NCBI RefSeq assembly: GCF_023055435.1
Contig: NW_025964001.1
Span: 29,078,001-29,142,000 of the forward strand
DNA length: 64,000 nt
Direction of reading: 5' to 3'
Origin: Haliotis rufescens
Lineage: Eukaryota
Shown: piece by piece, positions 148 through 61,591 of the stretch
Layout: the number at the start of each line of letters is the position of its first letter
Position numbering within the stretch: position 1 is the first letter of the stretch
Notes under the pieces: generated by a model
What the model was told of the DNA's origin: nothing
What the model saw: the letters and a program-made list of their open reading frames with translations, nothing else
Database searches by the model: none
Translations under genes and position numbers: made by a program

Positions 148-523
148 CTATCATGTCAAGTACGTCTTCTAGGAGATTTTGTGGTGAAGATTCTTCTGCC
201 GCATGAAACATCTTGTCGCTTGAGGTATTGTTCAGGATGCTTGGAACATTATTCATAGGCACAAATCTGCATTGGGTTTGTGTTAGAGGGTGGTTTCTGC
301 AAGGCTGGGAACTATATCTGGTGTTGCTTGCCGCCGGTAGGGTTCCACTGTAGTCTGGACAACTCCATGGGTTCTCTTGGGATACAATTAGAAGAGCCGG
401 CTCGTACATTTGTTGTGGGTCATCCAGACCTGGAAACTTTGTCATATCCAGATTGTAGGTGATGTCGGTTTCGATGAACAGAGGCTGTTGCAGTCGCAGG
501 GGCACAGGAACACCAACCTCCAT
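148..523 (-). CDS. Paralogue A of uncharacterised 'QPLxIDT-LDMSKFPGLDDP' family, coding exon 1 (exon 2 lies beyond the window start)
   Basis: Translates MEVGVPVPLRLQQPLFIETDITYNLDMTKFPGLDDPQQMYEPALLIV...NLLEDVLDMI. Phase-1 donor ATAG|GTAACC at 148/147, equivalent to the donor in the other paralogues. An in-frame upstream ATG at 541 is an alternative start. Confidence 0.85.
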
Positions 524-604
524 TTCAGTATATCTCCTCATGCTTGTGGATGTGGAATGGACAATGATATCATAACATGTTTCAGCTGTACATCATCTTC
601 GCTG

Positions 605-970
605 GACCAATCAAGTTACACGCCTGTACCTTCACCATCAGGGCTAAGCCAATCAGAACAGATGTCTCATTGAGTAGCGGGCTGGAGTGAGTTATGATAA
701 CAAATTACGTCAGTTAGGTGCACGCTAATGCTGCTATTTACGGCTGAATTGTAACATGTGGCGGGGATTAGTCACGGGTGGATTGAGTGTAGATAGACAG
801 CGGTGGACAAGCCCCCTTCATTCACCTGCACTTAACCCTCATCAGTTTAATCGCCATGTCTACACAACTCCTCCCGCGGCACACTAAGGGACATTATGCA
901 AATGTTTTTGTTCGATGGGCAAGAACTGTAATCCGTGATGTAATTTAATGGGTGGTGTATACTACTTCAA
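605..970 (-). promoter_or_regulatory. Upstream region of A: two CCAAT boxes plus a block conserved with the upstream region of B
   Basis: CCAAT at 607-611 and 649-653 (TGATTGG on the sense strand). Collinear motifs at 753-967 are shared with 8680-8905. Confidence 0.6.
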
Positions 971-2444
971 GGGGCAATAAATGGATCCGTGTTGTTATTT
1001 TGAGCAATATTCCCTTCTTGTCTGAACAATGTACGCTTGTAAATTATCCCAATAATGTATTCTTAACATGATATTATGTATTTATTATTCATACCAAATG
1101 CATCAAGTGTACTTTCATCTCGATAGGATAATGTGAAGTGCAGCACTAAATCGTTTAATATATATGAGGCAGTACATTTAGATGTAGATTGTTTTGAATA
1201 TGTATGAATGAAGACGTGCAGTTTTATCAACGCATAAAGGAATATTCGATCTTTTCGTCTCAAACTCTTTTCTATAATGGTATTATGGAAGACCCAAACT
1301 TAAACTCGGACGCTGGATCCCAGTTTGATGAACGCTCCGACAACTTGTGAAATGTCGAGACGGAGCCAAGCTTAAACGATTTCCCGCTTTCCCAATACTC
1401 AACATTATTGATTTACTGCTGACTATAATACACTAGCACATGTTTCGTATTGATTCTTAGAAACGTTAGTTCAGTGAGCCACTAGAACAAGAACTGACAC
1501 GATGGAAGGTAACGGGCAAAACTCCATAAACTATTTTGTATCACCACGGCCCGTTATACTTCGATAACTACTGTCACATGTCTACACACAATTCTTTTTC
1601 ATGCTACCATGGACTTTCATGTAATAAATTCGCACAAATATATAAGAAGATATCAATAGAAAATTACATTGTCCAATGCATGTGTCCACTGGAGTACATC
1701 GAAAAAAATAAATATTATTGTAGTTATGTTTATGTGGGAATTATGAAAAAGTGATATAGATAATACAGACGGTTTAGGTCGAGTGAAATTCAAATGAGAT
1801 TTATCTATTGTAATATTCTGATCGTTGTCAAAGCAAACTGGATACGAGCACTGGAAGTTAGTGAAATGTGAATCATTTGACAACGCTGTTGCTATCATCA
1901 CTTCATTTAGACTTAAAAAGGTGGTATATATGTATTTGTTCTATAATGTATTTGATAGAATTTACATTGTAAGTGTCCTTTCATTTGTATAAATATATTC
2001 CAATATTAAACGTAGAATGTTGCCACTGTAATATATTTTACTAATCACAATTGCAAAACATACCAACAAACATCTGCCCGCCATACATAAAACAAATTAA
2101 TTTATGAGTTTATGATGTAGCACTGCATGATGGATCATATGTTTAAGGATGTGACATTAAATATATACATCATTGTCATTGTTGTCATTGTATGTCATTG
2201 TTTTGTCGAAAATATATACAGAAGAAGAACATTTTTTTGTGTCACACATCATATGTTACATTATCATGATCATTTTAAAATACAATAAATAAAAATATTT
2301 TTTTCAGTGCGCTTAGCGTGTTGATGAAGGGAAGACAAACTGAAAAGGATCAACCACTAGTTTTTGATTTGATACCCTCTCGCATGCAGATATTTAGCAT
2401 TGGATTGTCATACTTTTCTGTCGTACTGCTACCTCTTGTAGGAA

Positions 2445-2606
2445 AGGGTCGATGAGGGAGTCTTGTGCTTGAAGCGCGAACTCGTCACGCCGAAGACCCG
2501 GGTTCGATTCCACACATCGGTACAATGCGTGAGGCCCATTTCTGGTATCACCGCCTTCATAATGCTGGAATATTTGTAAAAGCGGCATAAAACGACACTC
2601 ACTCAC
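2445..2606 (+). mobile_element. tRNA-derived SINE, family 1 (degenerate head)
   Basis: B box GGTTCGATTC, body matches 28264-28429, (ACTC)n tail, imperfect TSD TCTTGTA(G/A)GAA. Confidence 0.85.
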
Positions 2607-2781
2607 TTCTTGTAAGAAGCCTGCAAACTTCGACCAATTGAACGCATATACATGGTGTCCAGCCCATGTTTCAAACCTCAGCTGCATTCCATGCATCTTA
2701 ACAACACCAGAAAAATACTTGAGGGTGTGAATCTTTACCGCGTATAGGAAGCAAAATTTAATAAATCTCAGTTCATCTTAA

Positions 2782-3434
2782 AGGGGAAGTGTACACGCAA
2801 AAATCACTTTCTTTCTTTTTCTAAACAAAACGCAATTTTAGAATGAATTAGTATCTGTGTTTGAAAATATACACTCATTTTTTTTCACAGTGAAAGTAGG
2901 AAGCTCACAATAGTGTTAAAATGATATGCCGTTATGAGGCCTTCGTTTTACGAGCGAAACAGGCCTGAGTTATCCCCCTTTGATTATGACGTAATTGGTG
3001 CCAATTCAACTGGGTCCCTGTCTATTCTCAACGCAAAAGATATCAAGGACCAGTTTGCGGTAAAACAACATGGTCTACGACACACTCCGGCGCAGTAGTG
3101 ACTCAGCATAACACAATTCTGGCTGGCATCTGAGATGCTAGAATCACAAAACTGTACCTACACCACGTGAAGCGGCTCTAACAAAGCATGATGACGTCAT
3201 AATGTTTATCAATTGGCACCAATGACGTCATATTGCAAGGGGCATAAGCCATGGTGTTTTTGTGATGGAAATAGAACACTTGGTAAATGTGAAAAATATA
3301 AATCGTTTTATTGCAAAAAATATGTTAATTAAATATGATGTTTTTATATTTTTGTCTATGACACTTCTATGTTAACACTTTTAATGTGGAAAAAGTACAA
3401 GAAAAATTGGTTCATTTCCGTGTGAACTTGCCCT
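2782..3434. mobile_element. Non-autonomous DNA transposon (MITE) with TTAA target site, Kolobok-like
   Basis: TTAA on both sides (2778-2781, 3435-3438). Termini AGGGGAAGTGTACACGCAAA and revcomp AGGGCAAGTTCACACGGAAA match 16/20. Internal inverted repeat ~2967-3006 vs ~3211-3249. Confidence 0.75.
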
Positions 3435-3829
3435 TTAAGTAAGGATAAGATGTAGGGATGAACAACGTTTTTACTGCAATTAGGAACAACGTTTCGATGA
3501 AGGTTCTAACACAGTTATCAAGCAAGTAACCTACACCGAGACATCGCCCTCTAATTGTTATAAACAAGTTGTTCAAACATATATCTTATCCCATACTAAG
3601 TACTCAACTTCTAAATGCCTCTCAAGAAGGAACAAATGTAAGTCAAATCATCCTGACAATCCCAAGAGGCGACGGGGAAGTCTTGATATCAAAACTGACA
3701 CTCCTGTCACCGAAGACTATGTGTGAAGCCTATTGCTGTCGTCTTCCTTCATGTTATTGTTAGACAAAAAGGGACCGTTTCCAAAATCATAAGAAATCAT
3801 TGTCCGCATTTCCATTATATCATGAACAG

Positions 3830-4790
3830 GTGTAAATGAATCACAATCAAATTTTAATGATACCAGGTGTTCGTGAAAAGGTGAGCATTTCCTGCCTCAC
3901 CGAGTGCTCCCGTCACAAACACATGCGAAGACAAGTCAATTGTACCATGGGACACATGTACCACATGTCAAAACAAGGAATTGCATCGGCCATAATTTTT
4001 ATCACTGACGCGTCAAATTTGGAAACGTCCTCCATATGTCTGCCATAAAACTCTTTGACAGCTTTACTGAGGCCTTGAATGTTTGAAATCTCGGAGTATT
4101 GCATTGGACAAAACTTTTGTCAGTCATGCTTCAAATTATGAAATGCCCATACGTATCTACCATAAAACTGCTTTGATGGCTTGAACGTTGTATCCGTGAT
4201 CAAACAACTTTTGTGTGAGAGTGGCCCCACGATATGACGCTCTTTCAAATCTTCGTAAAAAAACATTCTCAATTGAACCTAACAAAATGTGAGATGTAGA
4301 CACCAAAGGCTTGATCTGCTGGAATATGATCGACATAAAGGGATAGGGTTATTGGAAACTTGAAGTCAACCCCCTTGTCTTACAGCCGTGTGGAGAAATG
4401 TTTGTCACTCTGAATCTAAATGCACAGATCTGTATATGAGGAAGATGAGGCGGTATCACTGGCCTCTTTTATTTCGAGCTCAGGTGGGTAAATCAGTAGA
4501 AGGCAATTGGCTATTGGACCATTTATGAACGATATAGGATTATGGATATAGCTGAAGCTTAAAGTTAAACTTCTTGGCCAAATTAATTTTTTTTATTTTG
4601 CCCATCCTAGCAGAAATTCTTATTCATAAGTAGAAATAGATCAGCAAGAGTACGGGTCTTCCGGAAGCGCTCGTTAAATCTCCAACATCATCATCAACAA
4701 AAAGTGAAGCACAATTGGTGCCCTGGGGATGCCTATCTCTGGTCTAAATGTCTCATCCCTTTCATATAGATGGTATCAATGAGGAAGTCC
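3830..4790 (-). mobile_element. Decayed Penelope-like retroelement, RT C-terminal region
   Basis: Minus-strand remnants IGIP.GTNCA (~4740-4710), RL.DKGVDFKFP, FGVYISHFVR and FYGR; many stops and frameshifts. Homologous to 33240-33620. Confidence 0.7.
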
Positions 4791-4871
4791 AGGACTCACT
4801 CCCCCATGACAAATACTATTTACACGTAATGAAGAGGAACCGCCCTTTATCCTGGTGAATATGGTACATAT

Positions 4872-5002
4872 NNNNNNNNNNNNNNNNNNNNNNNNNNNNN
4901 NNNNNNNNNNNNNNNNNNNNNNNNNNNNNNNNNNNNNNNNNNNNNNNNNNNNNNNNNNNNNNNNNNNNNNNNNNNNNNNNNNNNNNNNNNNNNNNNNNNN
5001 NN
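4872..5002. other. Assembly gap
   Basis: Run of N. Confidence 1.
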
Positions 5003-6525
5003 CAGTAACATATTTAATACAAATACGAACCAGCGCACACAGGGATACAAAATTTCTCAGCAATGTGGAGGGGAATTTGCAAAGGGATGTGTATTCCATA
5101 TTGTAATTGTGGTCCGACAATACAGCTTAATGCCAATCGTTTTATATCAATGCTCACAACAGTTCGTATTTGTTTATGACGGGTTTTCGTTAAATGTTAC
5201 GCGTGTTTCGTGTGTTCTTCGGTGTGTGCTCGTAAGGAAAACAATCTGCACAAAGTGAACTTATTGTACTTGTATTAAGTGAATAAGGAAACGTACAACT
5301 TTATGGATAACATCTTCTGGTTTATTGCATATAGCGACGGTTGTATGTAGATCACGCTAGAACTAGAATGCCAATCAAACAGCATTAAGTGTACCGCTGG
5401 TAAGTCTTTTGTGTGGCATCACATTTTGGTGCATGTTTGAGATAGGTAACCCTAAATACATGTCAGTCTAAACTGTTAATTTTAAATGTTCTCTGTGAAC
5501 GATCCTTTTAACATTTCGACATGAGCAGGTTGATTTTCTTTGGATGGTGTTGAAGGAAGAACACTATATGTTTAACAAAATCATCTTGGATCAGAGACAT
5601 GTTAATAGTTATGTTATCTGTTCTTTAAGTTCGGAATGAAGATTTTTCACCCACTTTATTCAAACCAATATGCTCATGCCTCTGTTACTCTGAACATGTT
5701 ACATATTGTTTATAACAAGAAATATAGTTTCTTGTAACTTTATATTTGACATTTCCAGTTGAACAAATAAGTCCCTCGTCCTTTGATTGCATCTAAGACT
5801 ACCGACAATGAGATATAGTGTGTTGCGATGGAAATTAAAATGTCAAAGTACCGTCCTCATATATAATCCCTGATATAACTGCACTTATCACAAAGCCCCA
5901 CTGATATACCTTCTTATCAAAGTAATAAACACACTTTGTCAGCACATAGTTACAAAGTAAATATGTCGGTAAATTCTTTACATAAGTATATGATCTTTAT
6001 ATGAACCCGTTATGCAATATCTTACCACAACCTTTCTACTTCTCGCAGGGAGCTGCCTGATGGGGGTTCTCGCGGAGGTCGTCCGATAAGTGGCATTGTT
6101 AACACAGGGAATGTGCACTGCTACATAGACCAATCCCACCATCTAATTGTATTCAGCCCCTGGGTGTATTTCAAGTTTATGTCACGGTTTGGCAGATTAC
6201 CTGATAACTGATTTGACAGGAGTTGATAATTACCGACTTCCTAAGCCCTTGATTTGAAGATATTTAATCGTACTTGTAAACATTGCATCACGTATTGTTA
6301 AAGCATTCTCTGCAGAGACGTGGGAATATCGCTGACAAAGATGAGAGCTTCCTGTTATCATAGGTGGTTTTGCAGATTTGGTCTTTCCTTATATATGTTG
6401 GAGTGAATACATCTTGAATGGTTTGCATAACAACAGCTGTCCAAGTTAACATAATACATAAGGAAGTAGTAAAACATTGTTTTGGATATTTGTTAAAGCA
6501 TGGTAACATAATACATGACCTTAGT

Positions 6526-6742
6526 TAGTTAGTTTGTTTGTTTGTTTGTTTGTTATTTAACGCCACACTCAGCAATATTCCGAAATACGCATCAGTCGGA
6601 AAGCGCACGTTAAATCTCCAAAGTAAGTAAGTAAGTAAGTAATATTCCAGCTATATGACGGCGGTCTGTAAATAATCGAGTCTGGACCAGACAATCCAGT
6701 GATTGACATCATGAGCATCCATCCGCGCAATTGGGATCGATG
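6526..6742 (-). mobile_element. SINE family 2, 5'-truncated, carrying a nested LINE-tail insertion
   Basis: Matches 7857-8126 in reverse. 13-bp TSD ACATGACCTTAGT (6513-6525, 6743-6755). Confidence 0.9.
6582..6640 (+). mobile_element. 59-bp 3' tail of an I/Nimb-like LINE with (AAGT)n end, inserted in a SINE
   Basis: Reverse complement of 46688-46746. TSD AATATTCC (6574-6581, 6641-6648). Confidence 0.85.
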
Positions 6743-7216
6743 ACATGACCTTAGTGGTTCATCTCTCCACTGTTGCTGATATATAGGTATGACATGGACA
6801 TTAATACATAAAATAAAAATAAAAAACTACCCACACACAACTAAGGTTATTTCAAAAGAAACTAAAAACATGATATCTGTCCTTCAGTTGATTTTTATTG
6901 TTCGTACTTAGACGAAACCATTTTGTTGCTTCGGGGGATGGAACCCGTACATCCATAAAATAGAAATGTAAGTCATCCTGTTACCAAGCAAATGAGTAAA
7001 ATATACTTTATATGTATATATTCATGTAATGTTGAATGATCCATAACATATCTGTATGAACACACTGTTACCTCTTCATATAGTGAATTGGTGCAGAAAA
7101 AAACAATACGGTAAAATACATTTGGCATCCGGGAATGTTCATAGCACCTTTAAGAAAATTATTTCTCATATAAGTATAATGATATAAATTAAATATAAAA
7201 TTGTAAGATAATGCCT

Positions 7217-8501
7217 TTACGTCACAACACGTCTTGTAAACGGTGGCACTTGCTGATATCCAAGATACGATCCATGGTAACCATAGTAACGACCAATATC
7301 GAAAGTATCGAGTCCTTTACATTGTCGCTTTTGTATGTCAGATTCAAACCCGTCATGTGTTCGCTTCCTCTTGTAAGATACACTATCTTTGACAGCTGAC
7401 AAGGACTGCAGATTACGCACACAGTCAGAAATCCGACGTAATCCAGTATCACCTGTTGGACATGAAGGTGTGTTGTTCTGGACGTGTCTCGCGCCATGGA
7501 AGAATCTGTAATGTATGTGTCCATTCTGCTGGTAATTCCTTGATAACAGAGGTGGGTGTGACAGATCAGAGTGACACAGACGAGGTGTATTCGTGTTTGG
7601 TACTATCGTATTGCTTGAAGTTGTACTCTCTGGAATCTTCATTAATCGTTCAAGTAATCCGTCCGCGCAGGTATCTGAAGAAAAGGAATAATTAATTCGA
7701 TTTAGTGATAATGTAAAGCACATACCAGCAAGAAAATCGACATTATAAACGTTTTTTATCCTGACGTCGTTAATTATTTTTTATACTGATCAAACTTATC
7801 AACAGCAGCATCAGAAATTGATAAGGAAGGAGTCATCAGTAGTCAACAATAAACGACCCGTGAAGATTCCGGGGTAGAATAGGTCTTCAGCAACCCATGC
7901 TTGCCGTATAGGTGACTATGCGTGTCGTAAAAGGCGACTAACGGGATCGGGTGGTCAGGCTCGCTGACTTGGTTGATGCATGTCATCGATCCCAATTGCG
8001 TGGATCGATGCTCATGATATTAATCACTGGATTGTCTGGTCCAGACATGATTATTTACAGACCGCCGTCATATAGCTGGAATATTGCTGAGTGCGGCGTT
8101 AAACAACAACCCAACCAACCAACCAATCAACAATAAACGAAATATTTACCTATCACATTGAGAATATCCTCCAAGATATGTCCACAAGATGCATCAGAAT
8201 GATTGCTAATGTTGTTGTCGGGAAACTTGGAAGGTGTATACACGTGCCTTGGATACTGCACACAACAGGAGGACATGGCATTGTCAACATCTGTAACTTC
8301 ACTGGGCGGAATGGTATATGCACAATGATAGAAATAGTTTGAAACTGTGTCCGGTGTGGCGATCAACAATGCTGGCTGCTGAAGGTGGGAGGGGTCGTCC
8401 AGGCCAGGGAACTTGGACATATCCAAACTGTAGTTAATGTCCGTGTCGATGTAGAGCGGCTGTTTTAGTTGCGGAGACACTGTAGCAGCTGGATGTAACA
8501 T
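7217..8501 (-). CDS. Paralogue B, join(8501..8150, 7674..7217), ~269 aa
   Basis: CACCATG start. QPLYIDTDINYSLDMSKFPGLDDPSHLQQPALLIAT. Donor ATAG|GTAAAT and acceptor CTTCAG|AT join in frame. Exon 2 contains KRKRTHDGFESDIQKRQCK (bipartite NLS-like). Confidence 0.85.
7857..8126 (+). mobile_element. SINE family 2, full length, in the intron of gene B
   Basis: 14-bp TSD TCAACAATAAACGA (7843-7856, 8127-8140). Tail GCTGGAATATTGCTGAGTGCGGCGTTAAAC followed by (CAAC)n. Confidence 0.92.
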
Positions 8502-15938: not shown

Positions 15939-17800
15939 GAAGAAGAAGAAGAAGAAGAATATTTTATTATAGTGTCACCCGCTGTACATATAAAATGACA
16001 AGGCAAGATGTAAAACTTCAGCGGCCGGCCAAAATGGCCTACGAGACACTAAAAGACTCATAAAAACATTATTTTATATATGTACACACCACATTTAATA
16101 GCAATTATGAAAATAACATTCATAATATTATCCCCCATACAAAAATCCTATATACACACAACCACATCCATTCCCACATCCAGACCTTCACTCACATCAG
16201 CTTACGCAAACCACGCAAACACACCCGCACATTCAGACACACCCAAACCCTCATTGACATCACTTCAATCACATCCGAACCCTCACCGTCACAAATCACT
16301 CTCACACACACCCTATTTCTTAAACACACCCTCACCTGTATCCGTTCCCGCATCCACACCAACTCCCTCATCCGCACCCATCAACCACGTCCTCACTCGC
16401 ATCCTCATCCCTCCCCGTCTCCACAAAAAAGAAGCACCAACCACGCACAAAGACACCAACAAAGTAACAATCTACCGCCGCATACACACACTCCCTCCCA
16501 ACGACCCCCCCCCCCCCCCCCCCCACCCCCACCCCACACACACACACACATACAACATGAAACAAGCACCCATCACAACCTCTCGGGCCAGCCACCCATC
16601 ACAACCCCCACACATCAACCCTACAACACAGCAAAACATGATAGATGATAAGAATTATCACACGCACACAACTACCCAGTTTATTGTTTTATATATTTTC
16701 TTCTCCGATACATTGAGAAGATTAATGCAGCAAGTGGTTTAACCAGTTCGTCGCACTGCATTAAGAATACGGTTTGGTCTGCCGGAGACATCGTAATAAA
16801 CGAGGGGTTAATAAGGGATACTTTCTGCCAAAGATTAAGTCTTAGCTCTCTATAACAGTCACACGTTACCAAAAAGTGAACTTCATCTTCAACAGTTTGG
16901 CCGTTACATAGTTTACAGACGCGTTCAGAAACAGGGGTTTTCGGGCGTGTATAACGACCTCTTTCTAATTCTAAGGGTAAAGTTCCACAGCGAAGTTTAG
17001 CTAAAGTGCTTCGTCGTGATCTATCCAGAATATGGCGTACATAAAATGAAACATTCAGTGTATTTTTAAACAATCTAAACGTTCTAAGCTTATTGCCTGT
17101 AGTATGGCCAGTGTCATTCCAAACTCCACGCAACCAGTTTTCTCTGTCAAGTTCTATCAGTTTTGATTTCAAAATTTGGAAATCTATATTACCAATATTA
17201 TAGAGATCCAAAAATGGTAGATCAAAAGAACCAAACATTCTTACAACTCTGCTGTCCCAGGACTTTCGGTATGACAGAGACCAATTTCTGATACGAGCTA
17301 TAATTCTCTGCGGGGGAGCTGAATTCAACTTCTTCCAGAAACGCACAACTTCGATTTTATGTTTAGTAATAATCGATGACCAACCCATCTCCCCTCTTAC
17401 GGCCAAATTAGAAGTAGTTTTTCCTACACCCAAGAAAAAGCGGCACGCTCTATTTTGGATGGCATTTATGCAACTAAATTCTCTGGTTCCCCAAATTGCT
17501 GCACCATACGTTAAGATAGGTTGTACAAGATTGTCATACAAAGTACTGAAAACATCATAGGTCATTCCTCCAACTAATTTAAATTTACTAATAATTACAC
17601 TGAGGGCTCTTCCGGCAGATTTAGCAATTTGTTTAGCTGTGAAATTTAAATCTAGGTGTTCCTGGAGCCAAAGTCCCAAATATTTATATGCATTACAAAT
17701 TTCAATATTCTCTCCTCCACAGTGAAAACTGACACTGGAACGCGTAACAGACTGCTGTCTATAATGGACAATTTTAGTTTTTTTGGTATTAATTTGAAGA
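15939..17800 (-). mobile_element. 5'-truncated non-LTR retrotransposon (RTE-X-like), ORF2 C-terminus plus GT-rich 3' UTR
   Basis: ORF 16681-17679 reads YKYLG...KLRTFRLFK...LAKLRCGTLPLELERGRY...ERVCKLC..VEDEVHFLVTC (CCHC). Ends AATAAA followed by (TTC)n. Confidence 0.9.
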
Positions 17801-21210: not shown

Positions 21211-21333
21211 ATTGATTGGATGAGTACAGTCGGTCCCAAGTGATTTGATTGGACGCTGCCACAGTGAGTCTTAGTGACCTGAGTGACACGAGGGGTATAA
21301 AGTGACGTGATGTAATCGGTTGTGCCATCATTC
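21211..21333 (+). promoter_or_regulatory. Core promoter of C: two inverted CCAAT boxes, TATA box, Inr-like site
   Basis: ATTGG at 21215 and 21248 (33 bp apart), TATAAAG at 21296, CCATCATTC about 30 bp further downstream. Confidence 0.7.
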
Positions 21334-21354: not shown

Positions 21355-22131
21355 ATGATGGACGTACCTCCCCACCTGCTTCAACCTCTGTGTATCGACA
21401 CCAACATCACCTACGAACTGGATATGTCCAAGTTCCCAGGTCTGGATGACCCACAACATATGTACCAGCCTGCTCTGTTGATAGCCACTGACTGGAGCGA
21501 CTACCATGAAGCACAACTTGTCACACATGACGCCGATGTTCCCGAGGATGACTTATACTCTCTCATAGGTATGTGTCTATCAAATCTATTAAATTGCATG
21601 AATCAGAAACATTTAAGTGTATCTTATACAATCCTTCAGCCAGTATTATTATGCAAAGGTTATGCAAATATTTCAGCTAAATCTAAATCTAGATATATCT
21701 AATCTAAATCATTACCAGATATTGCAAAACATATTGTTGTATATTATATATACTTATATCTGCATTGTTATTTTTCAGAATCCAGTCAGGTCCTGTTCCC
21801 GGAATTTACAGATTCAAGCAGTGATGAAAATGCCAATTTCGAAGCTCTCTTGGATGAAGTGATCTCCTCAACGGCATCTTGCGGCAACCTTTGGGATGAA
21901 TCAGATTTCACTTTGTCGGATTTAAAATCCTCAACAGACTGTTGTTACCAATCAGAGTTATCGCCCCTAGGCGGAAGGGGCCAGAAGCGACGTCATTCCA
22001 GTGATACTGACCATTTGTATACCAGCAAGAAATACAGAATGACAGAAGTTGACACGCATACAGCAATGCTCCCATCGCTTGTTTCTGTGTACCCAACTTC
22101 CAATAATTGCATCTTTGGAAGAGATTCATAG
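21355..22131 (+). CDS. Paralogue C, join(21355..21568, 21779..22131), ~188 aa
   Basis: ACCATG start. QPLCIDTNITYELDMSKFPGLDDPQHMYQPALLIATDWSDY. ATAG|GTATGT and TTTCAG|AA join in frame. Contains FEALLDEVI and RGQKRR..KKYR; ends PSLVSVYPTSNNCIFGRDS*. ATTAAA at 22338. Confidence 0.9.
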
Positions 22132-27898: not shown

Positions 27899-28196
27899 CA
27901 CCCGTGAAGATCCGCCGTAGAATAGGTCTTCAGCAACCCATGCTTGCCGTGAAGATCCGCCGTAGAATAGGTCTTCAGCAACCCATGCTTGCCGAAAAAG
28001 GCGACTTCGCTTGTCGTAAGATGCGACAAATGGGATCGGGTGGTCATGCTCGCTGACATGGTTGAAGCATATCATCATATCCTAATTGCGTGGATCGATG
28101 CTCAATCACTTTATTGTCTGGTCCAGACTCGATTATTTACAGAACGCCGTCACATTGCTGCAGTATTGCTGAGTGCGGCGTTAAACAACAAACAAA
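27899..28196 (+). mobile_element. SINE family 2 with a 45-bp tandem duplication of its 5' end
   Basis: 13-bp TSD CTATGCTGGATCA (27886-27898, 28197-28209). 27902-27946 is repeated at 27947-27991. Confidence 0.92.
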
Positions 28197-28263: not shown

Positions 28264-28429
28264 GGGGGCGGTCGTGTAGCCTAGTGGTTAAAGCGTTCGC
28301 TCGTCACGCCGAAGACCCGGGTTCGATTCCCCACATGGTTACAATGTGTGAAGCCTATGTCTGGTGTCCCCCGCCGTGATATTGCCGGAATATTGCTTAA
28401 GCGGTGTAAAACCATACTCACTCACTCAC
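28264..28429 (+). mobile_element. SINE family 1, full length
   Basis: A and B boxes, (ACTC)n tail. TSD CGATGGCAT (28255-28263, 28430-28438). Confidence 0.95.
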
Positions 28430-30687: not shown

Positions 30688-30768
30688 TCTGATTGGTTGT
30701 TTAGGATAAGTGTCGTGTGATGTGATTGGCCCATGTAAAGAGTCACGCTACTGACAGGCCTATATGTC
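30688..30768 (+). promoter_or_regulatory. Promoter of D: two inverted CCAAT boxes and a weak TATA
   Basis: ATTGG at 30692 and 30725 (33 bp apart, as in C). CCTATATG at ~30759. Confidence 0.6.
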
Positions 30769-30814: not shown

Positions 30815-31628
30815 ATGTTGGACGTACCTACTCATCTCCTCCAAACTCTAAGTATCAACACCAACATCACCTACGATCTGGATATGTCCAAGTTCCCAGG
30901 TCTGGATGACCCACAACATATGTACCAGCCTGCTCTGTTGATAGCCACTGACTGGAGCGACTACGTCTACCATGACGCACCGTGTGTCACACATGACGCA
31001 AACAGTGTTTCAAGTTCCCATGAATCGGACGGTGTCTTAGAAAGCGATTTATACTCTCTTATAGGTATGTATACATTGTCACCAGAATCTGAACGTAAAA
31101 GTAACGGATATTGAAAGGATCTTTACGTTTTTTACATTATTCATTTTTCATGTGCTTATGCATATAATTTTGAAAATGATCCTATAGTGAACAAATTTAC
31201 TTATGAACTGCTCTTTTTTTCTTACAGAATCAACTGATGCCTTGCTGACAGACCAAGGTTTCGCTGTCGACGACATTACTATGCAGACACTCCTCGATGA
31301 CGTCCTTGCAGATTCAGTGATACCAAGTGACATATTTGGATTAATTGACTTGGATACTGACAGTCAAAGTTCCTTGTCAACAAGTGATTCTCCACAAACA
31401 GACCATACAACCCCCAACATTGGATTAACCTGTTCCCCGGACATGGAAGAATTACTCCCTGTTAGAACTTGCGGTAGAGGTCAAAAGCGACGTCTCTCCG
31501 ATGACGCCTGTTACCCGGATGTTGAAAAAAGATCAAAGATGATGGAGTCATTCACGCAAGCGTTACCTTATTTGGTAGTGAATTTGTGCCACGAATCCAA
31601 GAATGGTGGAATTGGCAGAGAGTCATAG
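30815..31628 (+). CDS. Paralogue D, join(30815..31064, 31228..31628), ~216 aa
   Basis: MLDVPTHLLQTLSINTNITYDLDMSKFPGLDDPQHMYQPALLIATDWSDY. ATAG|GTATGT and TTACAG|AA join in frame. Contains MQTLLDDVL and RGQKRR..KRSK; ends SKNGGIGRES*. AATAAA at 32063. Confidence 0.9.
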
Positions 31629-34503: not shown

Positions 34504-34639
34504 NNNNNNNNNNNNNNNNNNNNNNNNNNNNNNNNNNNNNNNNNNNNNNNNNNNNNNNNNNNNNNNNNNNNNNNNNNNNNNNNNNNNNNNNNNNNNNNNN
34601 NNNNNNNNNNNNNNNNNNNNNNNNNNNNNNNNNNNNNNN
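34504..34639. other. Assembly gap
   Basis: Run of N. Confidence 1.
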
Positions 34640-34644
34640 TCCCA

Positions 34645-40819: not shown

Positions 40820-40822
<3 letters not shown>

Positions 40823-40874: not shown

Positions 40875-40876
<2 letters not shown>

Positions 40877-43665: not shown

Positions 43666-43674
43666 CAGACAGAC

Positions 43675-44760
43675 ATGGGCGTTCCGACACATCTGTTACA
43701 GCCTCTTAGTGTTGATACCAGCTCAAGTTATGATCTCGACATGTCCAGGTTTCCAGGCCTGAATGATCCAAGATACAAAAATGAACCTATGTTAATGGTT
43801 GCACAGAGATCTACAAATTACTGTGGATATAACAACATTCAATGGACGTGTTCTGGCAGAAGGGAGAGTTCAATCAGGCTCCCCCAAACAATTCACCATG
43901 CGGATACCAGTTTAACTTCCAGATGTCCACCAATGCATTCTTCTGTGCACCCAGTGGATGTTCCTGACGATCTGCTTGAAATCACTGGTAAGTGGAGCTC
44001 GGTACTGATAATGCATACTTCATGCTTATGTTCTGGAAATATTTCTTCATGGATAGTCTTGGATGAATTAGAATTTTGTTGTTGTCAAATCGAATATTAT
44101 TATGACCTCTACTTATACCAAATGCCAAATATAAATGTACTTATTTAGATTTATAAATAATTCAAATATGAATATTCAAGCCTTGCTTCTTTATTCTCCT
44201 CAGATCTCCAAGCTCAGGATTTGTTGGAACTTCTGGATACAAAAGAATATGAGATTCTCGTCGATGATATTAGTCAAGAACTGCAGAGACATGATCAGTT
44301 ACCAGATATACAGATCCTTGCAGTCGAACAAAAAAGGGATTGTACTCATGATCAAAGACAATTGCATACAAATTACCATCGACCAGATCTACATTCAACG
44401 CCATTTGAACAAAGGAGATTCAGTTGTTACCAAAGTGAAATACCTCAGCACCATCCAAGGAATACCACGCCGTACAACAGGTCTTTAAATATGTGCAAGG
44501 ACTTCAAAGGATATGTGTATCCCACATACAACATGAGCACAAACAGATGTGTGGCTGTAAATGCACCGGTTAATTCATTCGGAAATACTTTAGTAAACCC
44601 TGTCGGTAATAAATCTGTAGCCACAGCTGTCAGGAACAAGAGGAAATGGTCAAGTGATAGTGACAATTCCCATAAGAGGAGATGTCTGCAGGCGAGACAT
44701 GTGGATTACCTTGGGCAATATTCTGTGATAAGACAAGGGTCTCAGATAGGAGTGATGTGA
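43675..44760 (+). CDS. Paralogue E (most divergent), join(43675..43987, 44204..44760), ~289 aa
   Basis: MGVPTHLLQPLSVDTSSSYDLDMSRFPGLNDPRYKNEPMLMV. ACTG|GTAAGT and CCTCAG|AT join in frame. Contains DLLELLDTKEYEILVDDI and KRKWSSDSDNSHKRRC. AATAAA at 44935. Confidence 0.88.
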
Positions 44761-54087: not shown

Positions 54088-54190
54088 TGTCTGATTAGCT
54101 CGGTAAGCTAAACGATCTGATTGGATGTCTAAACGGGCTTACAGCACATTGTTTAAATACCCGTGATGTAACCGTGGATGGCATAGTTCC
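54088..54190 (+). promoter_or_regulatory. Core promoter of F: CTGATTAG/CTGATTGG, TTTAAATA, Inr-like TAGTT
   Basis: ATTGG at 54120, TTTAAATA at 54152. Nearly identical in G (60660-60760). Confidence 0.6.
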
Positions 54191-54200
54191 CTTCACAACC

Positions 54201-55207
54201 ATGCCGGACGTACCTAGCCACCCGCTTCAACCTCTGAGTATCGACACCAACATCACTTATGCCTTGGATATGTCCAAGTTCCCAGGTCTGGATGACCCAC
54301 AACATATGTACCAGCCTGCTCTGTTGATAGCCACTGACTGGAGCGACTATGTCTACCATGACGCACAGTGTGTCAAATATGACGCAAACAGTTGCTCAAG
54401 TTCCCATGAATCGGACAGTCTATTAGAAAATGATTTATACTCTCTTATAGGTATGTATATTGTCATTGTGATCTGTGTGACAGTATTAGTTTTAGCAATC
54501 ATAACGTGAAAGTAATGCACATGGAAGGGATTTTGTCGATTCTATTTACATTTGTTATGTGGCTCATGAAAATAATGCTATGTAAGTGAGACAGAGAAGG
54601 CCACATGGTCATACGACTTAGATTTATTTGTAGACGGCTAATATTTTCTAGTCCCATTTATCATATGGTGAGTATCTGCCTCACTGGTACGAAGATCTTG
54701 AACCATGATGTATCAATGACATGGTAACCAGATTAATAATGCTTTTTTGTGATCAGTTCTGTTGTTCATGTTACTGTTTTCTTTCCAGAATCCAGCCAGG
54801 AGTTCCTAACAGATGTCGACACCAGCAACATAATTGACGATCAAACTTTCCTGTCTCTTCTGGATGACGTCGTTGAAGACAGTGACGTGATCACCCCCAT
54901 TGACATCAGTCCAGGCACATCCAACACCATAACAGAATCTCTAGAAGACACCTGGGATTGTCTTGACGATGAAGTTCTTTTCCACACAGACGAAACAGAG
55001 CAGCACACCTGTGAATTTGTCTCAAAAGAACAGTTATCTCCCTTTGCATCATATATCAGGGGACAAAAACGACGCCGAAATGACGAGAGCATAAACGTGT
55101 CTGCTAACAAGAAATCGAAAATGGGGGATAGATCGTCTCTGCATATTCCAACCATGGTTACCGTTTGTTCTAGGTCTAATGGATGTGAACTCCAGAGGCA
55201 ATCATAG
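54201..55207 (+). CDS. Paralogue F, join(54201..54450, 54789..55207), ~222 aa
   Basis: ACCATG start. QPLSIDTNITYALDMSKFPGLDDPQHMYQPALLIATDWSDY. ATAG|GTATGT and TTCCAG|AA join in frame. Contains FLSLLDDVV, WDCLDDEVLF and RGQKRRR..KKSK. Confidence 0.9.
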
Positions 55208-58200
55208 CTGATAATTTCTTTTATTGCCTTTGAGCCCCATCGATCTCAGTGCTTGAACCTTTTGTCTACTCCACGTTACTTTGAATACTCAATATAGTGC
55301 ATACGTTTGTTCCAAGTGACCTATTGTTCTATTTGTACAGTACATACACAAAAGTATCTTTTACACAGATACATGATACCTACCATGTTTCGCATGTTTT
55401 GGCTTTTGATATTATCTACATCTGTTACTTATCTACACCCATATCTTCTGTTACATGATTAAACTTATATCAGTGAAGTACAGTTGTTTTTTGTTATTGA
55501 TGCTGGACAAAACATGATGTTTAATATGGCTCTGTTTTCAATACACATTGTAATGGTGTAATTCAAGTAAACGTTTAAACACTTGTTGACGATTAGACTC
55601 GTGTTGAAACTTCCAATAAGTTCAAAAGGACTAGTAGCCAACACAAAAACATTTTCAAAACATTTTCATAAGGTTTCATCAAAGCTTTTCGTTTTATTAA
55701 CGTTTTGGACATGTTTCACAACCATTCAATATGTTACTAAAATGTTTTATTATGTTATTCAAGAACATCAAGCTATAACATGGGCGAAACTATTAGAAAC
55801 ACTACAAATATGTTATGCCAGAACATATTTGATATTTCAAACATTGTGGACAAGTAAGGGAAACCAACCCATACGAATAAGCGTAACTGCGTCTCACAAT
55901 TATAATTAGCGCCATCGATGAACACTGTCTTGGATTGATAACGCCCTGGTATAACGATTTTACAACAGTTACAGTTAATCTGTGGACGAAGTGTCAAATG
56001 AAAATAGAGCTGATATGAGTAAGACAAAACTTTATATGATTTTGAGCGTGGGGTGGTTGATACATAGTACTTTGCCGTCACTATCCGGCCGCTATTGCAT
56101 TCGGCTTTTGGTTGCCTACCTACCACTGACACTTATTGGCATTTCTTCCGTATTATATCTGAAATTTATGATTTTACAGTACTATACTACTAACTTTGAT
56201 GTTTTTTGGAAATATGAGCAATTTCGAAGATTTCAGGTGATAGAAACGTTGTGAAATGGATTATATGGAAAATAATTACAAGACACATTCTTTAGAATTG
56301 GCACTAACTGAACTAAATATGGATCATCTGGTTCTTGTTTTTCTTTGCATGACTTCCCCGCGTGTATTTTCAAAAATTTAAATTGAAGCAACGTCTACAA
56401 TGTGTATTTATAATATTTCCCCCAAACAATCAATTCATCATTTTCGTTTTTCATGAAAACGAGGAAAAGTAAAACGAGTCGGGTGCTGTAACGTGTTTGC
56501 ATAAGTGGTCGCTCGCTAGTGAGTAGTCAAAAGCTATCACAATATATTTCCAGTGAGGTGGTCATCGTTTGTTGATTTTTAACATGAAAATATTAATCGC
56601 AAATGCTTTTGTAACAAGGAGATAGTTGTAGGCAACATAGGCTCCTAACACCAATGAAATATTCTTTAAAAAAAGATTGCAACCATATTCGTTCGGTTTT
56701 CGATAAACATGTTTTATCACTATATATTATATTGAATTTGATTTAGTTCTGTCAAAAACATGTTGGCCAAATAAAATTCATAGGCTTGATTCACTGTAAC
56801 TGTAAACTGTTCCGTGATGAAGGTGTCAATCGCAGCTTGTTACAATGCCCGTTTAGACAACAGAAGTCCCCAGTATCTCATGTTTGTAGTAAGGGGCGAC
56901 AAGCTGACGTGTTTGATTTGTTGTCTTCGTACCCGAATTCGTGGGATGTGGTTCATAATATCAGTCACTGGTTTGCCCTGCCAAGGTTCCATTATTTCAT
57001 AAAGCCGGGGTATTGTGTGGAACAATTACGTTCGAATTGTCTAAGATATGGTTCTTAATTTACATTACTTCTCTGTCGACTGATATATTTCCGACGTTAT
57101 TCAAGTGGACATTAAATTCGCACTAAAGTGTTCCCCCCAAAAATCATGCAATTATACCAGTTATTTCATCTTTGGATTAACTATATGCTTACTGATTACA
57201 GTTAAAGTTATGACTTTGTTATAACGTGGAACATTGTTGTTTTCGCTGCGGCAAGAGGGAAAAAGGAGACACGAGCATTCCAGTGGATACAAAATGACAT
57301 TTCGGATGTACTGGTGAAAACGCCAAAGACACACGTGAATGTGAATTATGTGAACACATGTGCACAAACTGTTGTTAAATACCATGTTATATAAACAAGT
57401 ATCTGTTGATGTCAGGTTTTGGCTGTAAATAAATGTTAAAATTGGATTTGTATCTGCACTCAACCGCTGATCATCAAGTGGATGGGTGTGGGGGTGGGGG
57501 TGGGTTTCCTGCTTGTACCACATTTTGCATTCCAGTGTAACTCGTGATGCTATTATAGTGACCACATCAAGCATTCAGTTCATCAAACACTTACATATAC
57601 ATCGTTGTTATAATACCGATAAAACTACAATTGAATATTATACTAAATATTTTATGCATCTGCTCAAAGCATTATCAATTGTTTTTTATTTCAGAAAGGT
57701 GGATAAAAATCAAAACCAAAGAATGAAGATTCTGCTGAAATCAACAATCAAAAGGTCTTTTTCTAAAGATATCAACATCTCCACAGACCTGTGTCTTGAA
57801 GTTTTTTGTTGAACGCTCACATGACCATTCTTAATTTCTTTCATGCAGTACAAGCTTAAAGTGTATACAGTATCCGACTCTTTGTCAGATGTATATTGTT
57901 AGTTGGTGTTTTACGTTTTGAACATTGGCAACAAAACACCAACTAACTGTTAACTGGGCTATTCCGTTTTCAAAACATTTTTGAGACGTTATAACCACAT
58001 GTTGCAGGATATGTTGCTGAAACGTTTCTGCAACCATACAAATTCACGTGAATGAAACATTATTTAAAACATTCCGGAACATTTCGTGATTTCGTGTTTT
58101 TATAACATTGTGGTGTTAACCGGGCTGTGACGTAAGGTGCATTGCAAATTTGAACACAGATGCAAAGAAGTAGTACGTATATATATATATAAAACAATAT

Positions 58201-60771
58201 GTATATATATATATGTAAACTGAACTGAACTGTTATAAAGGAATCTCGAAAGTTATGGACCTGCTCAAGACCTGCCCCCTTCCATGTTGACTGGAGTCGT
58301 GTCTTGAAAGCCAAAGGCAGTTTTGTTCTTGAATACTTTGGGTCAGTTGCACATTAGCTCATTTGTGTCACCACAGAGTTAAAATGAGAATATGCATTCT
58401 ATGTCTCAACCGGATGCTTCCCACATTACTCCGTAACAAACGCTGCACCATGTCGAATGCATATTTTGAGGCAAGGTATCTATATCGGCTTATCCGTTTG
58501 CCAATTCTTTCTTTTCAGTTGTTGTACCATCTTTACATTTTAAAATAAGATACTGTTTATACAAAGCGCACATTTCCGGCGAAAATGTTGTGAAATATAT
58601 TGCAGTAAACAAGGTGATCACAAAAACCTCATTTTGAAGGGAGTGATAATATGTGTGACAATGTGAAACGCATTTGTGATGTGAAAGTAATCACGGTGTG
58701 TCACCAATACCGAACATAAACAGTCCATTGTCACTGTTACGAGTGTTGTGATAAAGGATACGTCATTCTAATTGTCTTCTTTTTGTCTTGCTGTGTTATT
58801 GTTATTCTTGTGGAACCAGCTGTAGTGACTGATCAGCAATACGTTTGCTCAGTGAAATCATGACAGCTATTGTCACCAGCACGGGGTACTTGCCTGTAAT
58901 CTTCTTTTCGTAAGGGAATATCAATTTGAATATGACAGTGACTCCATTGAATGAGATGCTTCTTTTTTGATAGTTGTGTGTAGAAGTGTGATTTAATTAA
59001 AGTGATGGTTGATATTCTTGCTGAACAAATGTGTCCCCAGGAATATAGTTTACATTAGCGATAAAAGAATATATCAAATATGACGTTGTTTTGTCATGAT
59101 GTCAGAAGTTGATGGCAATGCATTAATATAATTATTTGTAAACTATTCTGCTATGTACAGAATCTCACATCTAACATATACATACAAGGTATTTACAGAG
59201 CCAAAAAGACAATCTTGTGTGATGACTTCACCATTGAAGTATGCTACAAAAATCTTCTTACACTAAAGACCCACAATGTACAATATCTAAGAATATATAC
59301 AAATAGAGATAATAAAATAGACAACCGTGAAATAAAGAACAAAGCAGAGGATTATTCATAAAAAGACTCGGGAAGCGTCCCTCGTCTTGTCATATAGGTA
59401 TACACATTATCTGGTATAAACTTAGTAATTTAGTATTGCACTTAAGAGGTGAAACAATTTGTGAAATAAAGATGTACCCCTGATATACCTTGTTTTGTTC
59501 TTGTAGGCATTACGTCATGGCGCGTGAAGTTATTTGTTTGTTTCTTTGTATAATGCAGACAATGGAAATGATAGGTTTGTCAATCGAAATTGAATACTGT
59601 ATCATACTCAAAGTAAGTGAGGAGTTTTTAGACATATGTTCACAACCAAATTTAGGCATATGTTCGATTTGAAACTAACACGAAAAGATTATTTAAGAAA
59701 TCTAGTTTCAAAATGACAGAGGTAAAACATAATTTTTGATTTTCATTGCTATGTTCAATTGGAGAGACGGACAAAACAATTTGTTTCATAAAATAAAAGT
59801 TATATATACAGATAAGAGCACATATTCAAATAATTAAAACGTACTATTTGATAGTGATTCATAAACACATGCTCATGATATAGTAGGAATTGTACTTTCG
59901 ATGTTTTGGGCAGAGATTGCTTATGAATATGGAAAAGGTTTTGTCGCTTTTATTTGCAAAATAGCCAAATATTGACATTCGGGTTATTGTAAGACTTGTA
60001 ATACATCAATATTAGAAAATGATAATGTTATTAGAATGCAGATACAAATATAAAACGCCAAACTCAGAGAATAAATAACAAGTCTCGATAATCCAACGAA
60101 ACAGATTCCATTAGCCGCAAAAAACAAAAGTGAGGTGAACATTATTTGAAGTGATCACTGATGACTGACGACACTAGGTGTTCGCGAAAGGGTAATATTT
60201 GCCACATTTAACCTGTCGGAGTATTCAAATTGTGTCATTATATTAATGTATTGAGTTAAAGATTTGTGTGTACATCTTTGACGTTACATGGCATTATATC
60301 ATGGAATGATATTTAAATAAGCAATTTCTGAATTACTGGTTTGTATATCCTGTTTAACTTTGGGGTTATATTCAAAAGGTAAGTAGTTACAAAATCTATT
60401 TCACTCAAAGACTAGGGAACGTGGCGATATATGCAGTAATTAATGTGTAAGCGATGACGCAGGCAGACAAACATCAAAGCGCTGCCGATCAATTATTGCC
60501 TATTTAGAGATGTTAAAACACACCATCAGACCACCAGACAAGCGACGCCTTGGGGTTGACGCGCATTGCAACGTGTCATTTGTGCTAATCACCTTTACAC
60601 AATAAAAGCTTTCACGCCGTTTTAACAGCTTCGTGTTTTCATACGGTATCACAGGAAATGTCTGATTAGCTCGATAAGCTAAACGATCTGATTGGATGTC
60701 CAAACGCGCTTACAGCACATGGTTTAAATACCAATGATGTAACCGTGGATGGCATAGTTCCCTTCACAACC

Positions 60772-61591
60772 ATGCTGGACGTACCTAACCACCCGCTTCA
60801 ACCTCTGAGTATCGACACCAACATCACTTATGCCTTGGATTTGTCCAAGTTCCCAGGTCTGGATGACCCACAACATATGTACCAGCCTGCTCTGTTGATA
60901 GCCACTGACTGGAGCGACTACGTCTACCATGACGCACATTGTGTCAAATATGACGCAGAGGATTCAGCAACTTCGGACAACTTAGACGATTTATTTGTAG
61001 ACGACTTACATTTCTTAATTGGTACGTATTATATTAACATCAGTCTATATCACTAATATCTGCCTATGCAGCTGTTAATCTATTATTGATTTTGGAAAAT
61101 TTTAACCTGATTAATAATACTTTGTTGTGAGCAGTTGTTCATGTTGCTGTTTTCTGTCCCCAGAATCAAGCGAGGCGTTCTTCACAGATGTCAGCAGCAG
61201 CAACATCATTGACGATCAAACTTTCCAGACTCTTTTGGATGACGTCATTGCAGACAGAGACGTCATCGCGGCCATTGACATCGATCCTGGCACTCTAAGC
61301 AACATAACGGAACCTCTAGAAAACATCTGGGATTGCCTTGATGATGAAGTTCTTTTCCACACAGACAAAACAGAGCAGCACACATGTCACGACGCAGTAT
61401 TTGTCTCAAAAGAACAATTACCTCCCTTTGTGTCATGTATCAGGGGACAAAAACGACGCCGAAATGACGAGAGCGAAAACGAGGTTGCCAACAAGAAATC
61501 GAAAAAGGCGGATATATCGTCTCTGCATATTCCAACAATAGTTTCAGTTTGTTCAAGGTCAAATGGGTGTGAACTCCAGAGGCAATCATAG
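60772..61591 (+). CDS. Paralogue G, join(60772..61021, 61164..61591), ~225 aa
   Basis: ACCATG start. QPLSIDTNITYALDLSKFPGLDDPQHMYQPALLIATDWSDY. ATTG|GTACGT and CCCCAG|AA join in frame. Contains FQTLLDDVI and RGQKRRR..KKSK; ends SNGCELQRQS*. Confidence 0.9.

What the first reader, a model, noticed from the sequence alone, without database searches (positions are those of the whole stretch)
148..61591. Cluster of seven paralogues defined by an unrecognised 42-aa N-terminal module
Seen in sequence: seven genes (A 523-, B 8501-, C 21355+, D 30815+, E 43675+, F 54201+, G 60772+) are the only intact host genes I can find in 64 kb. All begin with an indel-free module, [V]PxxLxQ[PT]Lx[IV][DEN]TxxxYxLD[ML][ST][KR]FPGL[DN]DPxxxxxP[AM]L[LM][IV]. 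All have a phase-1 intron right after an acidic hydrophobic helix, and the six complete copies splice into open frames of 188-289 aa. Outside the module, A, B and E cannot be aligned with C/D/F/G, so the cluster looks old and the module is under strong purifying selection. I cannot match the module to any family I know. Inference: a lineage-restricted clustered gene family, possibly undescribed. The six-frame ORF track splits these genes into unrelated-looking pieces.
Basis: partly seen in the sequence, partly recalled or inferred. Interest (0 to 1): 0.92.

Follow-up and report, generated by a model that had tools for sequence, protein, structure and literature searches.

The report
Mollusc family of small acidic nuclear proteins
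The seven genes are real members of a family of at least 25 tandemly duplicated red-abalone genes, listed in RefSeq only as "uncharacterized protein", that also occurs in limpets, scallops, mussels and pearl oysters and matches no described protein family; their function is untested.

Summary
Seven two-exon genes in the window share an indel-free N-terminal module of about 40 aa and a G|GTA phase-1 donor straight after an acidic helix. Six splice into frames of 188-289 aa.

The genome is Haliotis rufescens. RefSeq proteins LOC124146629, LOC124146633, LOC124146643 and LOC124146649 match my models for C, D, E and G, all named "uncharacterized protein".

- The genome holds at least 25 copies in two clusters on one contig.
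- Relatives occur in other Haliotis species, Lottia, scallops, Mytilus and Pinctada.
- Pfam, PDB sequences, two fold searches and the paper library gave nothing.

Three elements are conserved family-wide: the module, acidic amphipathic helices around the conserved intron, and a C-terminal bipartite nuclear-localisation motif. Most proteins have pI near 4 and are largely disordered.

My best reading is nuclear adaptors or cofactors that dock through the module. This is inferred, not shown.

The near-identity of the module among C, D, F and G reflects concerted evolution, most likely gene conversion, and not purifying selection alone. A 79-nt block is identical in five paralogues whose exon 2 is only about 50% identical.

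The parts
148..541 (-). Gene A, exon 1 (Met at 541 or 523; last exon base 148, donor G|GTAACC). Exon 2 lies outside the window.
   Evidence: H. asinina orthologue P0014
8150..8501 (-). Gene B, exon 1 (117 aa plus 1 base), carrying the module and an acidic helix
7217..7674 (-). Gene B, exon 2 (151 aa plus stop), with a KRKR-x10-KR motif
21355..21568 (+). Gene C (LOC124146629), exon 1
21779..22131 (+). Gene C, exon 2 (116 aa plus stop)
   Evidence: P0092, 188 aa
30815..31064 (+). Gene D (LOC124146633), exon 1
31228..31628 (+). Gene D, exon 2 (132 aa plus stop)
   Evidence: P0001 holds both exon peptides; 216 aa
43675..43987 (+). Gene E (LOC124146643), exon 1
44204..44760 (+). Gene E, exon 2 (184 aa plus stop)
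   Evidence: P0082, 289 aa
54201..54450 (+). Gene F, exon 1
   Evidence: H. cracherodii orthologue P0086, 222 aa
54789..55207 (+). Gene F, exon 2 (138 aa plus stop)
60772..61021 (+). Gene G (LOC124146649), exon 1
61164..61591 (+). Gene G, exon 2 (141 aa plus stop)
   Evidence: P0088, 225 aa
21425..21503 (+). 79-nt block inside the module. It is 100% identical in C, D (30885-30963), F (54271-54349), G (60842-60920) and a fifth copy outside the window, and 96-99% identical in five more copies.
   Evidence: no RNA-structure signal, z = 0.30
21212..21249 (+). Gene C promoter: two inverted CCAAT boxes (ATTGG) 33 bp apart, followed by TATAAA. D has the same layout (30692-30729), and so do most other copies.

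Best explanation
The window holds seven of at least 25 tandemly duplicated genes of red abalone (Haliotis rufescens). They belong to an undescribed protein family shared by gastropods and pteriomorph bivalves. Each gene has its own short promoter with inverted CCAAT boxes and a TATA-like box, and two coding exons split by a phase-1 intron whose position is conserved. The product is a small protein. It is strongly acidic in the three window paralogues measured (pI 4.1-4.3; E is near neutral at 6.9) and mostly disordered. Three elements are conserved: (i) an N-terminal module of about 40 aa with the core L-x2-D-x4-Y-x2-D-x3-F-P-G-x9-P-x-L; (ii) one or two acidic amphipathic helices around the intron; (iii) a C-terminal classical bipartite nuclear-localisation motif, KR[KR]-x10-12-K[KR]. 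The most likely working, which is inferred, is as follows. The protein enters the nucleus through the bipartite motif. It docks on a conserved partner through the module. It then presents acidic helices of the transactivation type, so it acts as an adaptor or cofactor without a DNA-binding domain. Duplication lets the tails diversify, while gene conversion and selection keep the docking module uniform across paralogues. Shown here: gene structure, family membership, conservation pattern, concerted evolution and promoter motifs. Inferred only: nuclear location, docking and cofactor activity.
For: Gene models and their identity to RefSeq proteins. Family size and clustering. Relatives named only in molluscs (Haliotis x3, Lottia, Mizuhopecten, Argopecten, Pecten, Mytilus, Pinctada). 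Conserved module plus invariant K-R of the bipartite motif across 21 diverse members. pI 4.05-4.5 in 10 of 11 proteins, a bipartite motif in all 11, and 9aaTAD-like patterns in the helices of most. AlphaFold2 gives the module pLDDT 82-89 without regular secondary structure, then helices at 72-92 and 99-112, with the rest below 50. Module omega is 0.1-0.35 with saturated dS against A/B/E. Between H. rufescens and H. asinina orthologues the module is the best-kept part in both pairs; the motif and tail are also better kept than the middle in E, less clearly in D. Intron position is conserved in Mytilus, where the unspliced read-through ORF P0069 can be set against the spliced model P0023. ATTGG is 13-fold enriched, and orientation-specific, at -170 to -60 from the ATG.
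Against: The 9aaTAD pattern is permissive, and acidic helices also serve as export signals or degrons. Paralogue E is not acidic (pI 6.9) and has no 9aaTAD match. One subgroup (five copies at 29.16-29.19 Mb) and LOC124146599 have no motif-bearing exon 2 within reach. No partner is known. A self-association test gave no verdict.
Confidence: 0.55

Rival explanations
1. The proteins are short-lived regulators linked to the cell cycle or proliferation. The N-terminal module would be a degron or docking site for a ubiquitin ligase, kinase or phosphatase rather than for a transcription factor.
For: Many copies carry two inverted CCAAT boxes 31-34 bp apart close to the start. From my own knowledge, that spacing is typical of NF-Y-driven G2/M promoters. 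The proteins are disordered and rich in Ser/Thr (15-23%), as many unstable regulators are. The module is conserved yet has no regular secondary structure in the models.
Against: No recognisable KEN or D-box motif is conserved. These promoters have a TATA-like box, unlike typical G2/M promoters. CCAAT boxes are common in many promoter classes. Nothing was tested for expression timing.
Confidence: 0.2
2. The module is kept alike only by gene conversion among young duplicates and has no function of its own. On this view the genes are fast-evolving, possibly dispensable orphans.
For: A 79-nt block is identical in five paralogues. Module dS is 0-0.45, against saturation in exon 2. F against G shows mosaic identity: 94% upstream, 99% module, 73% rest of exon 1, 86% exon 2.
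Against: The same module, with the same invariant residues, is found in bivalves and a limpet, where conversion with abalone copies is impossible. Against A, B and E, synonymous sites are saturated while dN stays at 0.15-0.43. All seven frames in the window are intact.
Confidence: 0.04
3. The genes derive from a mobile element or a virus and are multiplied by transposition.
For: Copy number is high and the intergenic DNA holds retroelement debris, for example the LINE-like ORF at 16684-17679.
Against: All 25 copies sit in two tandem clusters on one contig and are not dispersed. Each has its own CCAAT/TATA promoter and a spliceosomal intron at a conserved position. No Pfam transposase, RT, integrase or capsid match was found. 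tblastn finds no dispersed fragments in the window.
Confidence: 0.03

Closest known systems
RefSeq 'uncharacterized protein' models of Haliotis rufescens (LOC124146629, LOC124146633, LOC124146643, LOC124146649, LOC124146599) and their orthologues in H. cracherodii and H. asinina
   Same: The sequences are identical to the window's C, D, E and G models, with the same splice junctions.
   Different: The family relationship, its conserved elements and its range across molluscs are not recorded in anything I could search.
Small acidic transcription cofactors without a DNA-binding domain (for example the CITED, SERTAD/TRIP-Br and LBH proteins; named from my own knowledge)
   Same: The layout is similar: short, disordered, acidic, with amphipathic helices of the activation type, a nuclear-localisation motif and a short conserved docking motif.
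   Different: There is no sequence relationship. Scans of all Pfam-A at E<=10 returned none of these families for 23 family sequences. The resemblance is one of design only.
Tandem gene families with concerted evolution confined to one segment
   Same: A conserved 5' segment is homogenised among paralogues while the rest diverges, giving mosaic identity.
   Different: Here the homogenised segment is a protein module that is also conserved across mollusc classes, so selection and conversion act on the same 114 bases.

Membership tests
Any Pfam-A family (includes LBH, SERTA, CITED and transposon or viral domains) | hmmscan match at or near the family's gathering score | tested here: not met
   Zero families at E<=10 for 7 exon-1 and 6 exon-2 peptides. 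For 10 full-length relatives only noise appeared (E 0.06-0.25, bits far below cut-off).
Any protein with a solved structure | Sequence-profile or fold match to a PDB chain | tested here: not met
   Profile searches gave best E 0.17-0.69 on unrelated chains. Foldseek gave no match. VIA-align gave best Z 4.0, all single-helix matches.
Classical bipartite nuclear-localisation signal | Two basic clusters, KR then K/R-rich, separated by 10-12 residues | tested here: met
   The pattern is present near the C-terminus of all 11 members examined. The K-R of the first cluster is invariant in a 21-member alignment. Function as an import signal was not testable.
Acidic transactivation domain (9aaTAD pattern) | Match to the 9aaTAD pattern within an amphipathic acidic helix | tested here: inconclusive
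   Matches fall in the predicted helices of C, D, G and most relatives, but E has none.
NF-Y (CCAAT-box) dependent promoter | CCAAT pentamer at a fixed distance upstream of the start, often duplicated | tested here: met
   17 of 25 copies have ATTGG at -170 to -60. Density there is 10.2 sites per kb against 0.76 per kb further upstream. The element is orientation-specific, and pairs are 31-42 bp apart. NF-Y binding itself is not testable here.
Mollusc-wide family defined by the N-terminal module (proposed here) | Module core L-x2-D-x4-Y-x2-D-x3-FPG-x9-P-x-L near the N-terminus, with a phase-1 intron after the following acidic helix | tested here: met
   All seven window genes meet it. So do 25 genome copies. 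There are 61 database representatives at E<=1e-3, at least one of them (P0040) a false positive. Mytilus shows the same intron position.

The most novel reading that the evidence does not exclude
The 40-aa module is a new protein-docking element that defines an undescribed, mollusc-wide class of nuclear adaptors or cofactors. In abalone the family has expanded to 25 or more genes. The docking end is held uniform by selection plus gene conversion while the effector tails diversify. The result would be a combinatorial set of adaptors feeding one conserved partner.
Probability: 0.3. Interest if true: 0.55.

Novelty: new variant of a known kind. Interest (0 to 1): 0.4.

Why it matters
Mollusc genomes are full of unnamed gene models, and few of them have been organised into families with defined conserved elements. 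This one now has a clear signature: the module, the intron position and the bipartite motif. It has a known range across gastropods and bivalves, a large tandem expansion in a farmed and endangered abalone group, and a clean example of concerted evolution confined to a functional segment. That is enough to seed a Pfam-type family. It also gives simple experiments, such as localisation, tethering assays and a pull-down with the module as bait. It does not bear on any long-standing open question that I can name.

Tried and rejected
Spliced transcripts, and the source organisms of the unnamed Logan/ENA relatives, therefore remain untested.
- Word-indexed protein search: A's exon 1 found nothing. 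Two family profiles found only Haliotis and scallop members. The exhaustive profile search was the one that worked.
- ESM Atlas gave no usable hit.
- Structure: two AlphaFold2 models gave no globular fold. Foldseek and VIA-align wide gave nothing beyond generic single helices.
- Complex prediction, with two copies of residues 1-115 of D, gave no verdict (score 0.00, controls not run, alignment not used). It is evidence neither for nor against self-association.
- An RNA-structure explanation for the identical 79-nt block is rejected: z-score 0.30, and no Rfam family lies there.
- Paper searches for eleven full gene or protein identifiers and two LOC-number prefixes of the family found nothing.
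- Motif resemblances recalled from memory were checked by eye and rejected because spacing or key residues do not fit across the family. These were the eh1 FSIDNIL motif, calcineurin PxIxIT, CtBP PxDLS, the PIP box, the HCF-1 motif and the SERTAD C-terminal DIDT..YD motif.
- Joined spliced sequences were never typed or submitted. Exons were searched separately by reference. Full-length work used the database proteins P0001, P0082, P0088 and P0092 that the tools returned.
Full report
**Observation**

A gap-free block of about 40 residues aligns in all seven. Its invariant positions include Q, L, T, Y, L-D, F-P-G-L, D-P and P-x-L.

Each first exon ends, straight after an acidic hydrophobic stretch such as D-L-Y-S-L-I, at a G|GTA donor. 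The donor leaves one base of the next codon, so the intron is phase 1. Phase-compatible acceptors with the best polypyrimidine tracts give exon 2 starts at 7674 (B), 21779 (C), 31228 (D), 44204 (E), 54789 (F) and 61164 (G). The resulting totals are 269, 188, 216, 289, 222 and 225 aa.

Exon 2 of A lies just left of the window, with its acceptor at window -275 in locus L010. It matches the Haliotis asinina orthologue P0014.

The two assembly gaps (4872-5002 and 34504-34639) are intergenic, lying between A and B and between D and E. No model touches them. I did not try to fill them, and the order of the genes across them rests on the assembly.

tblastn with all exon peptides finds no further fragments in the window.

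**What it is**

A profile of the seven exon-1 peptides finds 25 places in the window's own 1.33-Gb genome, at E 1e-37 to 1e-9. Twenty lie on contig C223 between 29.04 and 29.26 Mb; the window is 29.078-29.142 Mb. Five near-identical copies lie at 58.28-58.31 Mb on the same contig.

Nearly all of these copies have the same Met-proximal module and the same G|GTA donor. Fifteen of them have an exon 2 carrying a KRK...KR motif within 1.5 kb.

An exhaustive profile search of 1.84 billion representative proteins gave 61 hits at E<=1e-3. At least one of these (P0040) is a false positive. The top hit, P0001, contains both exon peptides of gene D exactly. It is XP_046372979.2, 'uncharacterized protein LOC124146633 [Haliotis rufescens]'.

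P0092 (LOC124146629, 188 aa), P0082 (LOC124146643, 289 aa) and P0088 (LOC124146649, 225 aa) match my models of C, E and G, junction residues included. The genome is therefore red abalone, and RefSeq already carries these gene models, without a name.

Named relatives are all molluscan and all 'uncharacterized' or 'hypothetical': H. cracherodii, H. asinina, Lottia gigantea, Mizuhopecten yessoensis, Argopecten irradians, Pecten maximus, Mytilus edulis/trossulus/galloprovincialis and Pinctada imbricata. Many further members come from unannotated ENA and Logan assemblies.

**Architecture**

An alignment of 21 diverse full-length members shows three conserved elements in otherwise unalignable sequence:
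- the N-terminal module, with invariant L, Y, D and F-P-G, and near-invariant D and P-x-L;
- acidic amphipathic helices;
- a C-terminal motif, K-R-[KR], then about 10-12 residues that often include S-x-D, then K/R-[KR]. This fits the classical bipartite nuclear-localisation consensus.

Within the window, A, B and E can be anchored to C/D/F/G at these elements.

Ten of the eleven members examined have pI 4.05-4.5. All eleven are 15-23% Ser+Thr and all carry the bipartite pattern. The helices of most match the permissive 9aaTAD pattern. Paralogue E is the exception, with pI 6.9 and no such match.

AlphaFold2 with family alignments gives the module pLDDT 82-89 but no regular secondary structure. 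It places helices at about 72-92 and 99-112 in D. The C-terminal half scores below 50.

The intron position is old. In Mytilus, an unspliced read-through ORF (P0069) ends ...E-L-I-G-S-Y, where the spliced RefSeq model (P0023) reads ...E-L-I-E-S-C. This is the same phase-1 site after the helix.

**Searches for a known family**

- All Pfam-A at E<=10 gave nothing for the 13 exon peptides and only sub-threshold noise for 10 full-length relatives.
- PDB sequence profiles gave nothing relevant.
- Foldseek gave no match. VIA-align against 48,161 chains gave a best Z of 4.0, all generic single helices.
- ESM Atlas gave no usable hit.
- Full-text searches for eleven identifiers, plus two LOC-number prefixes covering the cluster, returned no paper.

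I did not submit any hand-joined spliced sequence. Exons were searched one by one by reference, and full-length work used the database proteins returned by the tools.

**Selection and concerted evolution**

In the 38-codon module, synonymous sites are saturated between A, B or E and the others. dN is 0.15-0.43. Where dS can be estimated, omega is 0.1-0.35. Together with the conservation in bivalves, this shows purifying selection on the protein.

Among C, D, F and G the picture is different. Module dS is 0-0.45, while dS in exon 2 is saturated; the exception is F-G at 0.29. Nucleotide identity is 89-99% in the module against 49-53% in exon 2, and roughly 45-60% in introns and flanks, again apart from the F-G pair.

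A 79-nt block (21425-21503) is 100% identical in five paralogues and 96-99% identical in five more. F against G is a mosaic: 94% upstream, 99% module, 73% rest of exon 1, 86% exon 2.

The block shows no RNA-structure signal (z = 0.30). Gene conversion confined to the one segment that selection keeps similar is the simplest reading. The similarity within the window therefore overstates selection, but the cross-class conservation does not.

Between H. rufescens and H. asinina orthologues of D and E, the module is 84-91% identical, against 60-73% for the middle. In E the motif (88%) and tail (96%) also stand above the middle. In D they do not clearly do so, at 65% and 71%.

A tree built from the module separates a gastropod group from a bivalve group. 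It pairs A and E with their H. asinina orthologues, so the paralogues predate that split. Forty columns resolve little else.

**Promoters**

Aligning 350 bases upstream of the seven genes shows shared TGATTGG elements. In 17 of the 25 copies ATTGG, the inverted CCAAT box, lies between -170 and -60 from the ATG. It is often present twice, 31-42 bp apart. A TATAAA or TTTAAA box follows about 40 bp downstream, with the ATG 50-60 bp after that.

The element occurs at 10.2 sites per kb there, against 0.76 per kb further upstream. It is orientation-specific, with 28 ATTGG sites against 2 CCAAT sites. This argues that each copy is an independent transcription unit with a short leader, probably NF-Y dependent. 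NF-Y binding is inferred.

**How it most likely works**

Shown here: the gene models, the family, the three conserved elements, the disorder and acidity, the promoter motif and the concerted evolution.

Inferred: the proteins are imported into the nucleus through the bipartite motif, dock on a conserved partner through the N-terminal module, and present acidic helices as an adaptor or cofactor lacking its own DNA-binding domain. I put this at about 0.55, counting the descriptive part; the cofactor step alone is nearer 0.35.

The main rival, at 0.2, is a short-lived, proliferation-linked regulator in which the module is a degron or enzyme-docking site. The paired CCAAT boxes and the Ser/Thr-rich disorder suggest it.

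Conversion-only similarity without function, and a mobile-element origin, are both close to excluded. The first fails on conservation across mollusc classes. The second fails on strict tandem clustering, each copy having its own promoter, the conserved intron and the lack of element proteins.

A self-association test of residues 1-115 gave no verdict and counts for nothing either way.

**Verdict**

Four corrections apply:
- the genes are already modelled in RefSeq;
- the family has at least 25 members in this genome and spans gastropods and bivalves;
- paralogues outside the C/D/F/G group share more than the module;
- gene conversion contributes to the module's uniformity.

Interest is moderate. 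This is a clean, definable new protein family with a neat case of segment-restricted concerted evolution. But unnamed lineage-specific families are common in molluscs, and the function is only inferred.

Noticed in passing
G000:C223:58.28-58.31 Mb (loci L019, L021-L024): A second cluster of five nearly identical 198-aa family members lies 29 Mb from the main cluster on the same contig. Their module variant reads ...DLDTTKFPGLDHP...
   Followed up: partly
G000:C223:29.16-29.19 Mb (loci L006, L007, L008, L011, L013): A subgroup has an intact module and a ...YLQ G|GTATG donor, but no exon 2 with the KRK...KR motif within 1.5 kb downstream. The intron may be longer, the C-terminus different, or the copies truncated.
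   Followed up: no
window 16684-17679 (-) and 16080-16739 (+): A 332-aa ORF has a C-terminal Cys/His knuckle that looks to me like the tail of a non-LTR retrotransposon ORF2, though Pfam gives no hit. A Pro/Thr/His-rich low-complexity ORF lies on the opposite strand. The region has strong negative GC skew (-0.29).
   Followed up: partly
window 28270-28341 (+): Rfam gives a tRNA match (34.9 bits; gathering score 29) that ARAGORN does not call. It may be a tRNA-derived SINE head or a decayed tRNA gene. A 45-bp tandem repeat with 2.1 copies lies close by at 27902-27994.
   Followed up: partly
P0018 (Lottia gigantea V3ZM82) and P0038: In the limpet members the module is followed by a CxxC-x17-CxxC insertion, with weak zinc-ribbon-like Pfam hits (zf-C2HC5 and Spt4, E 0.1-0.25). 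Many bivalve-type members instead have H-x4-5-C-x-C right after the module. Abalone C/D/F/G have lost these cysteines.
   Followed up: no
P0012, P0017, P0031, P0060 (unnamed ENA/Logan proteins): Some relatives carry two or three tandem copies of the module. Others have it after a Pro/Gln-rich N-terminal extension of about 200 aa, so the module is not always N-terminal. The source organisms are unknown.
   Followed up: no
P0040 (E 1.7e-6): A 480-aa bacterial-looking protein with four internal repeats matched part of the module profile. I take it for a false positive due to a repeated ...TPGISD...IPAIII... stretch.
   Followed up: no
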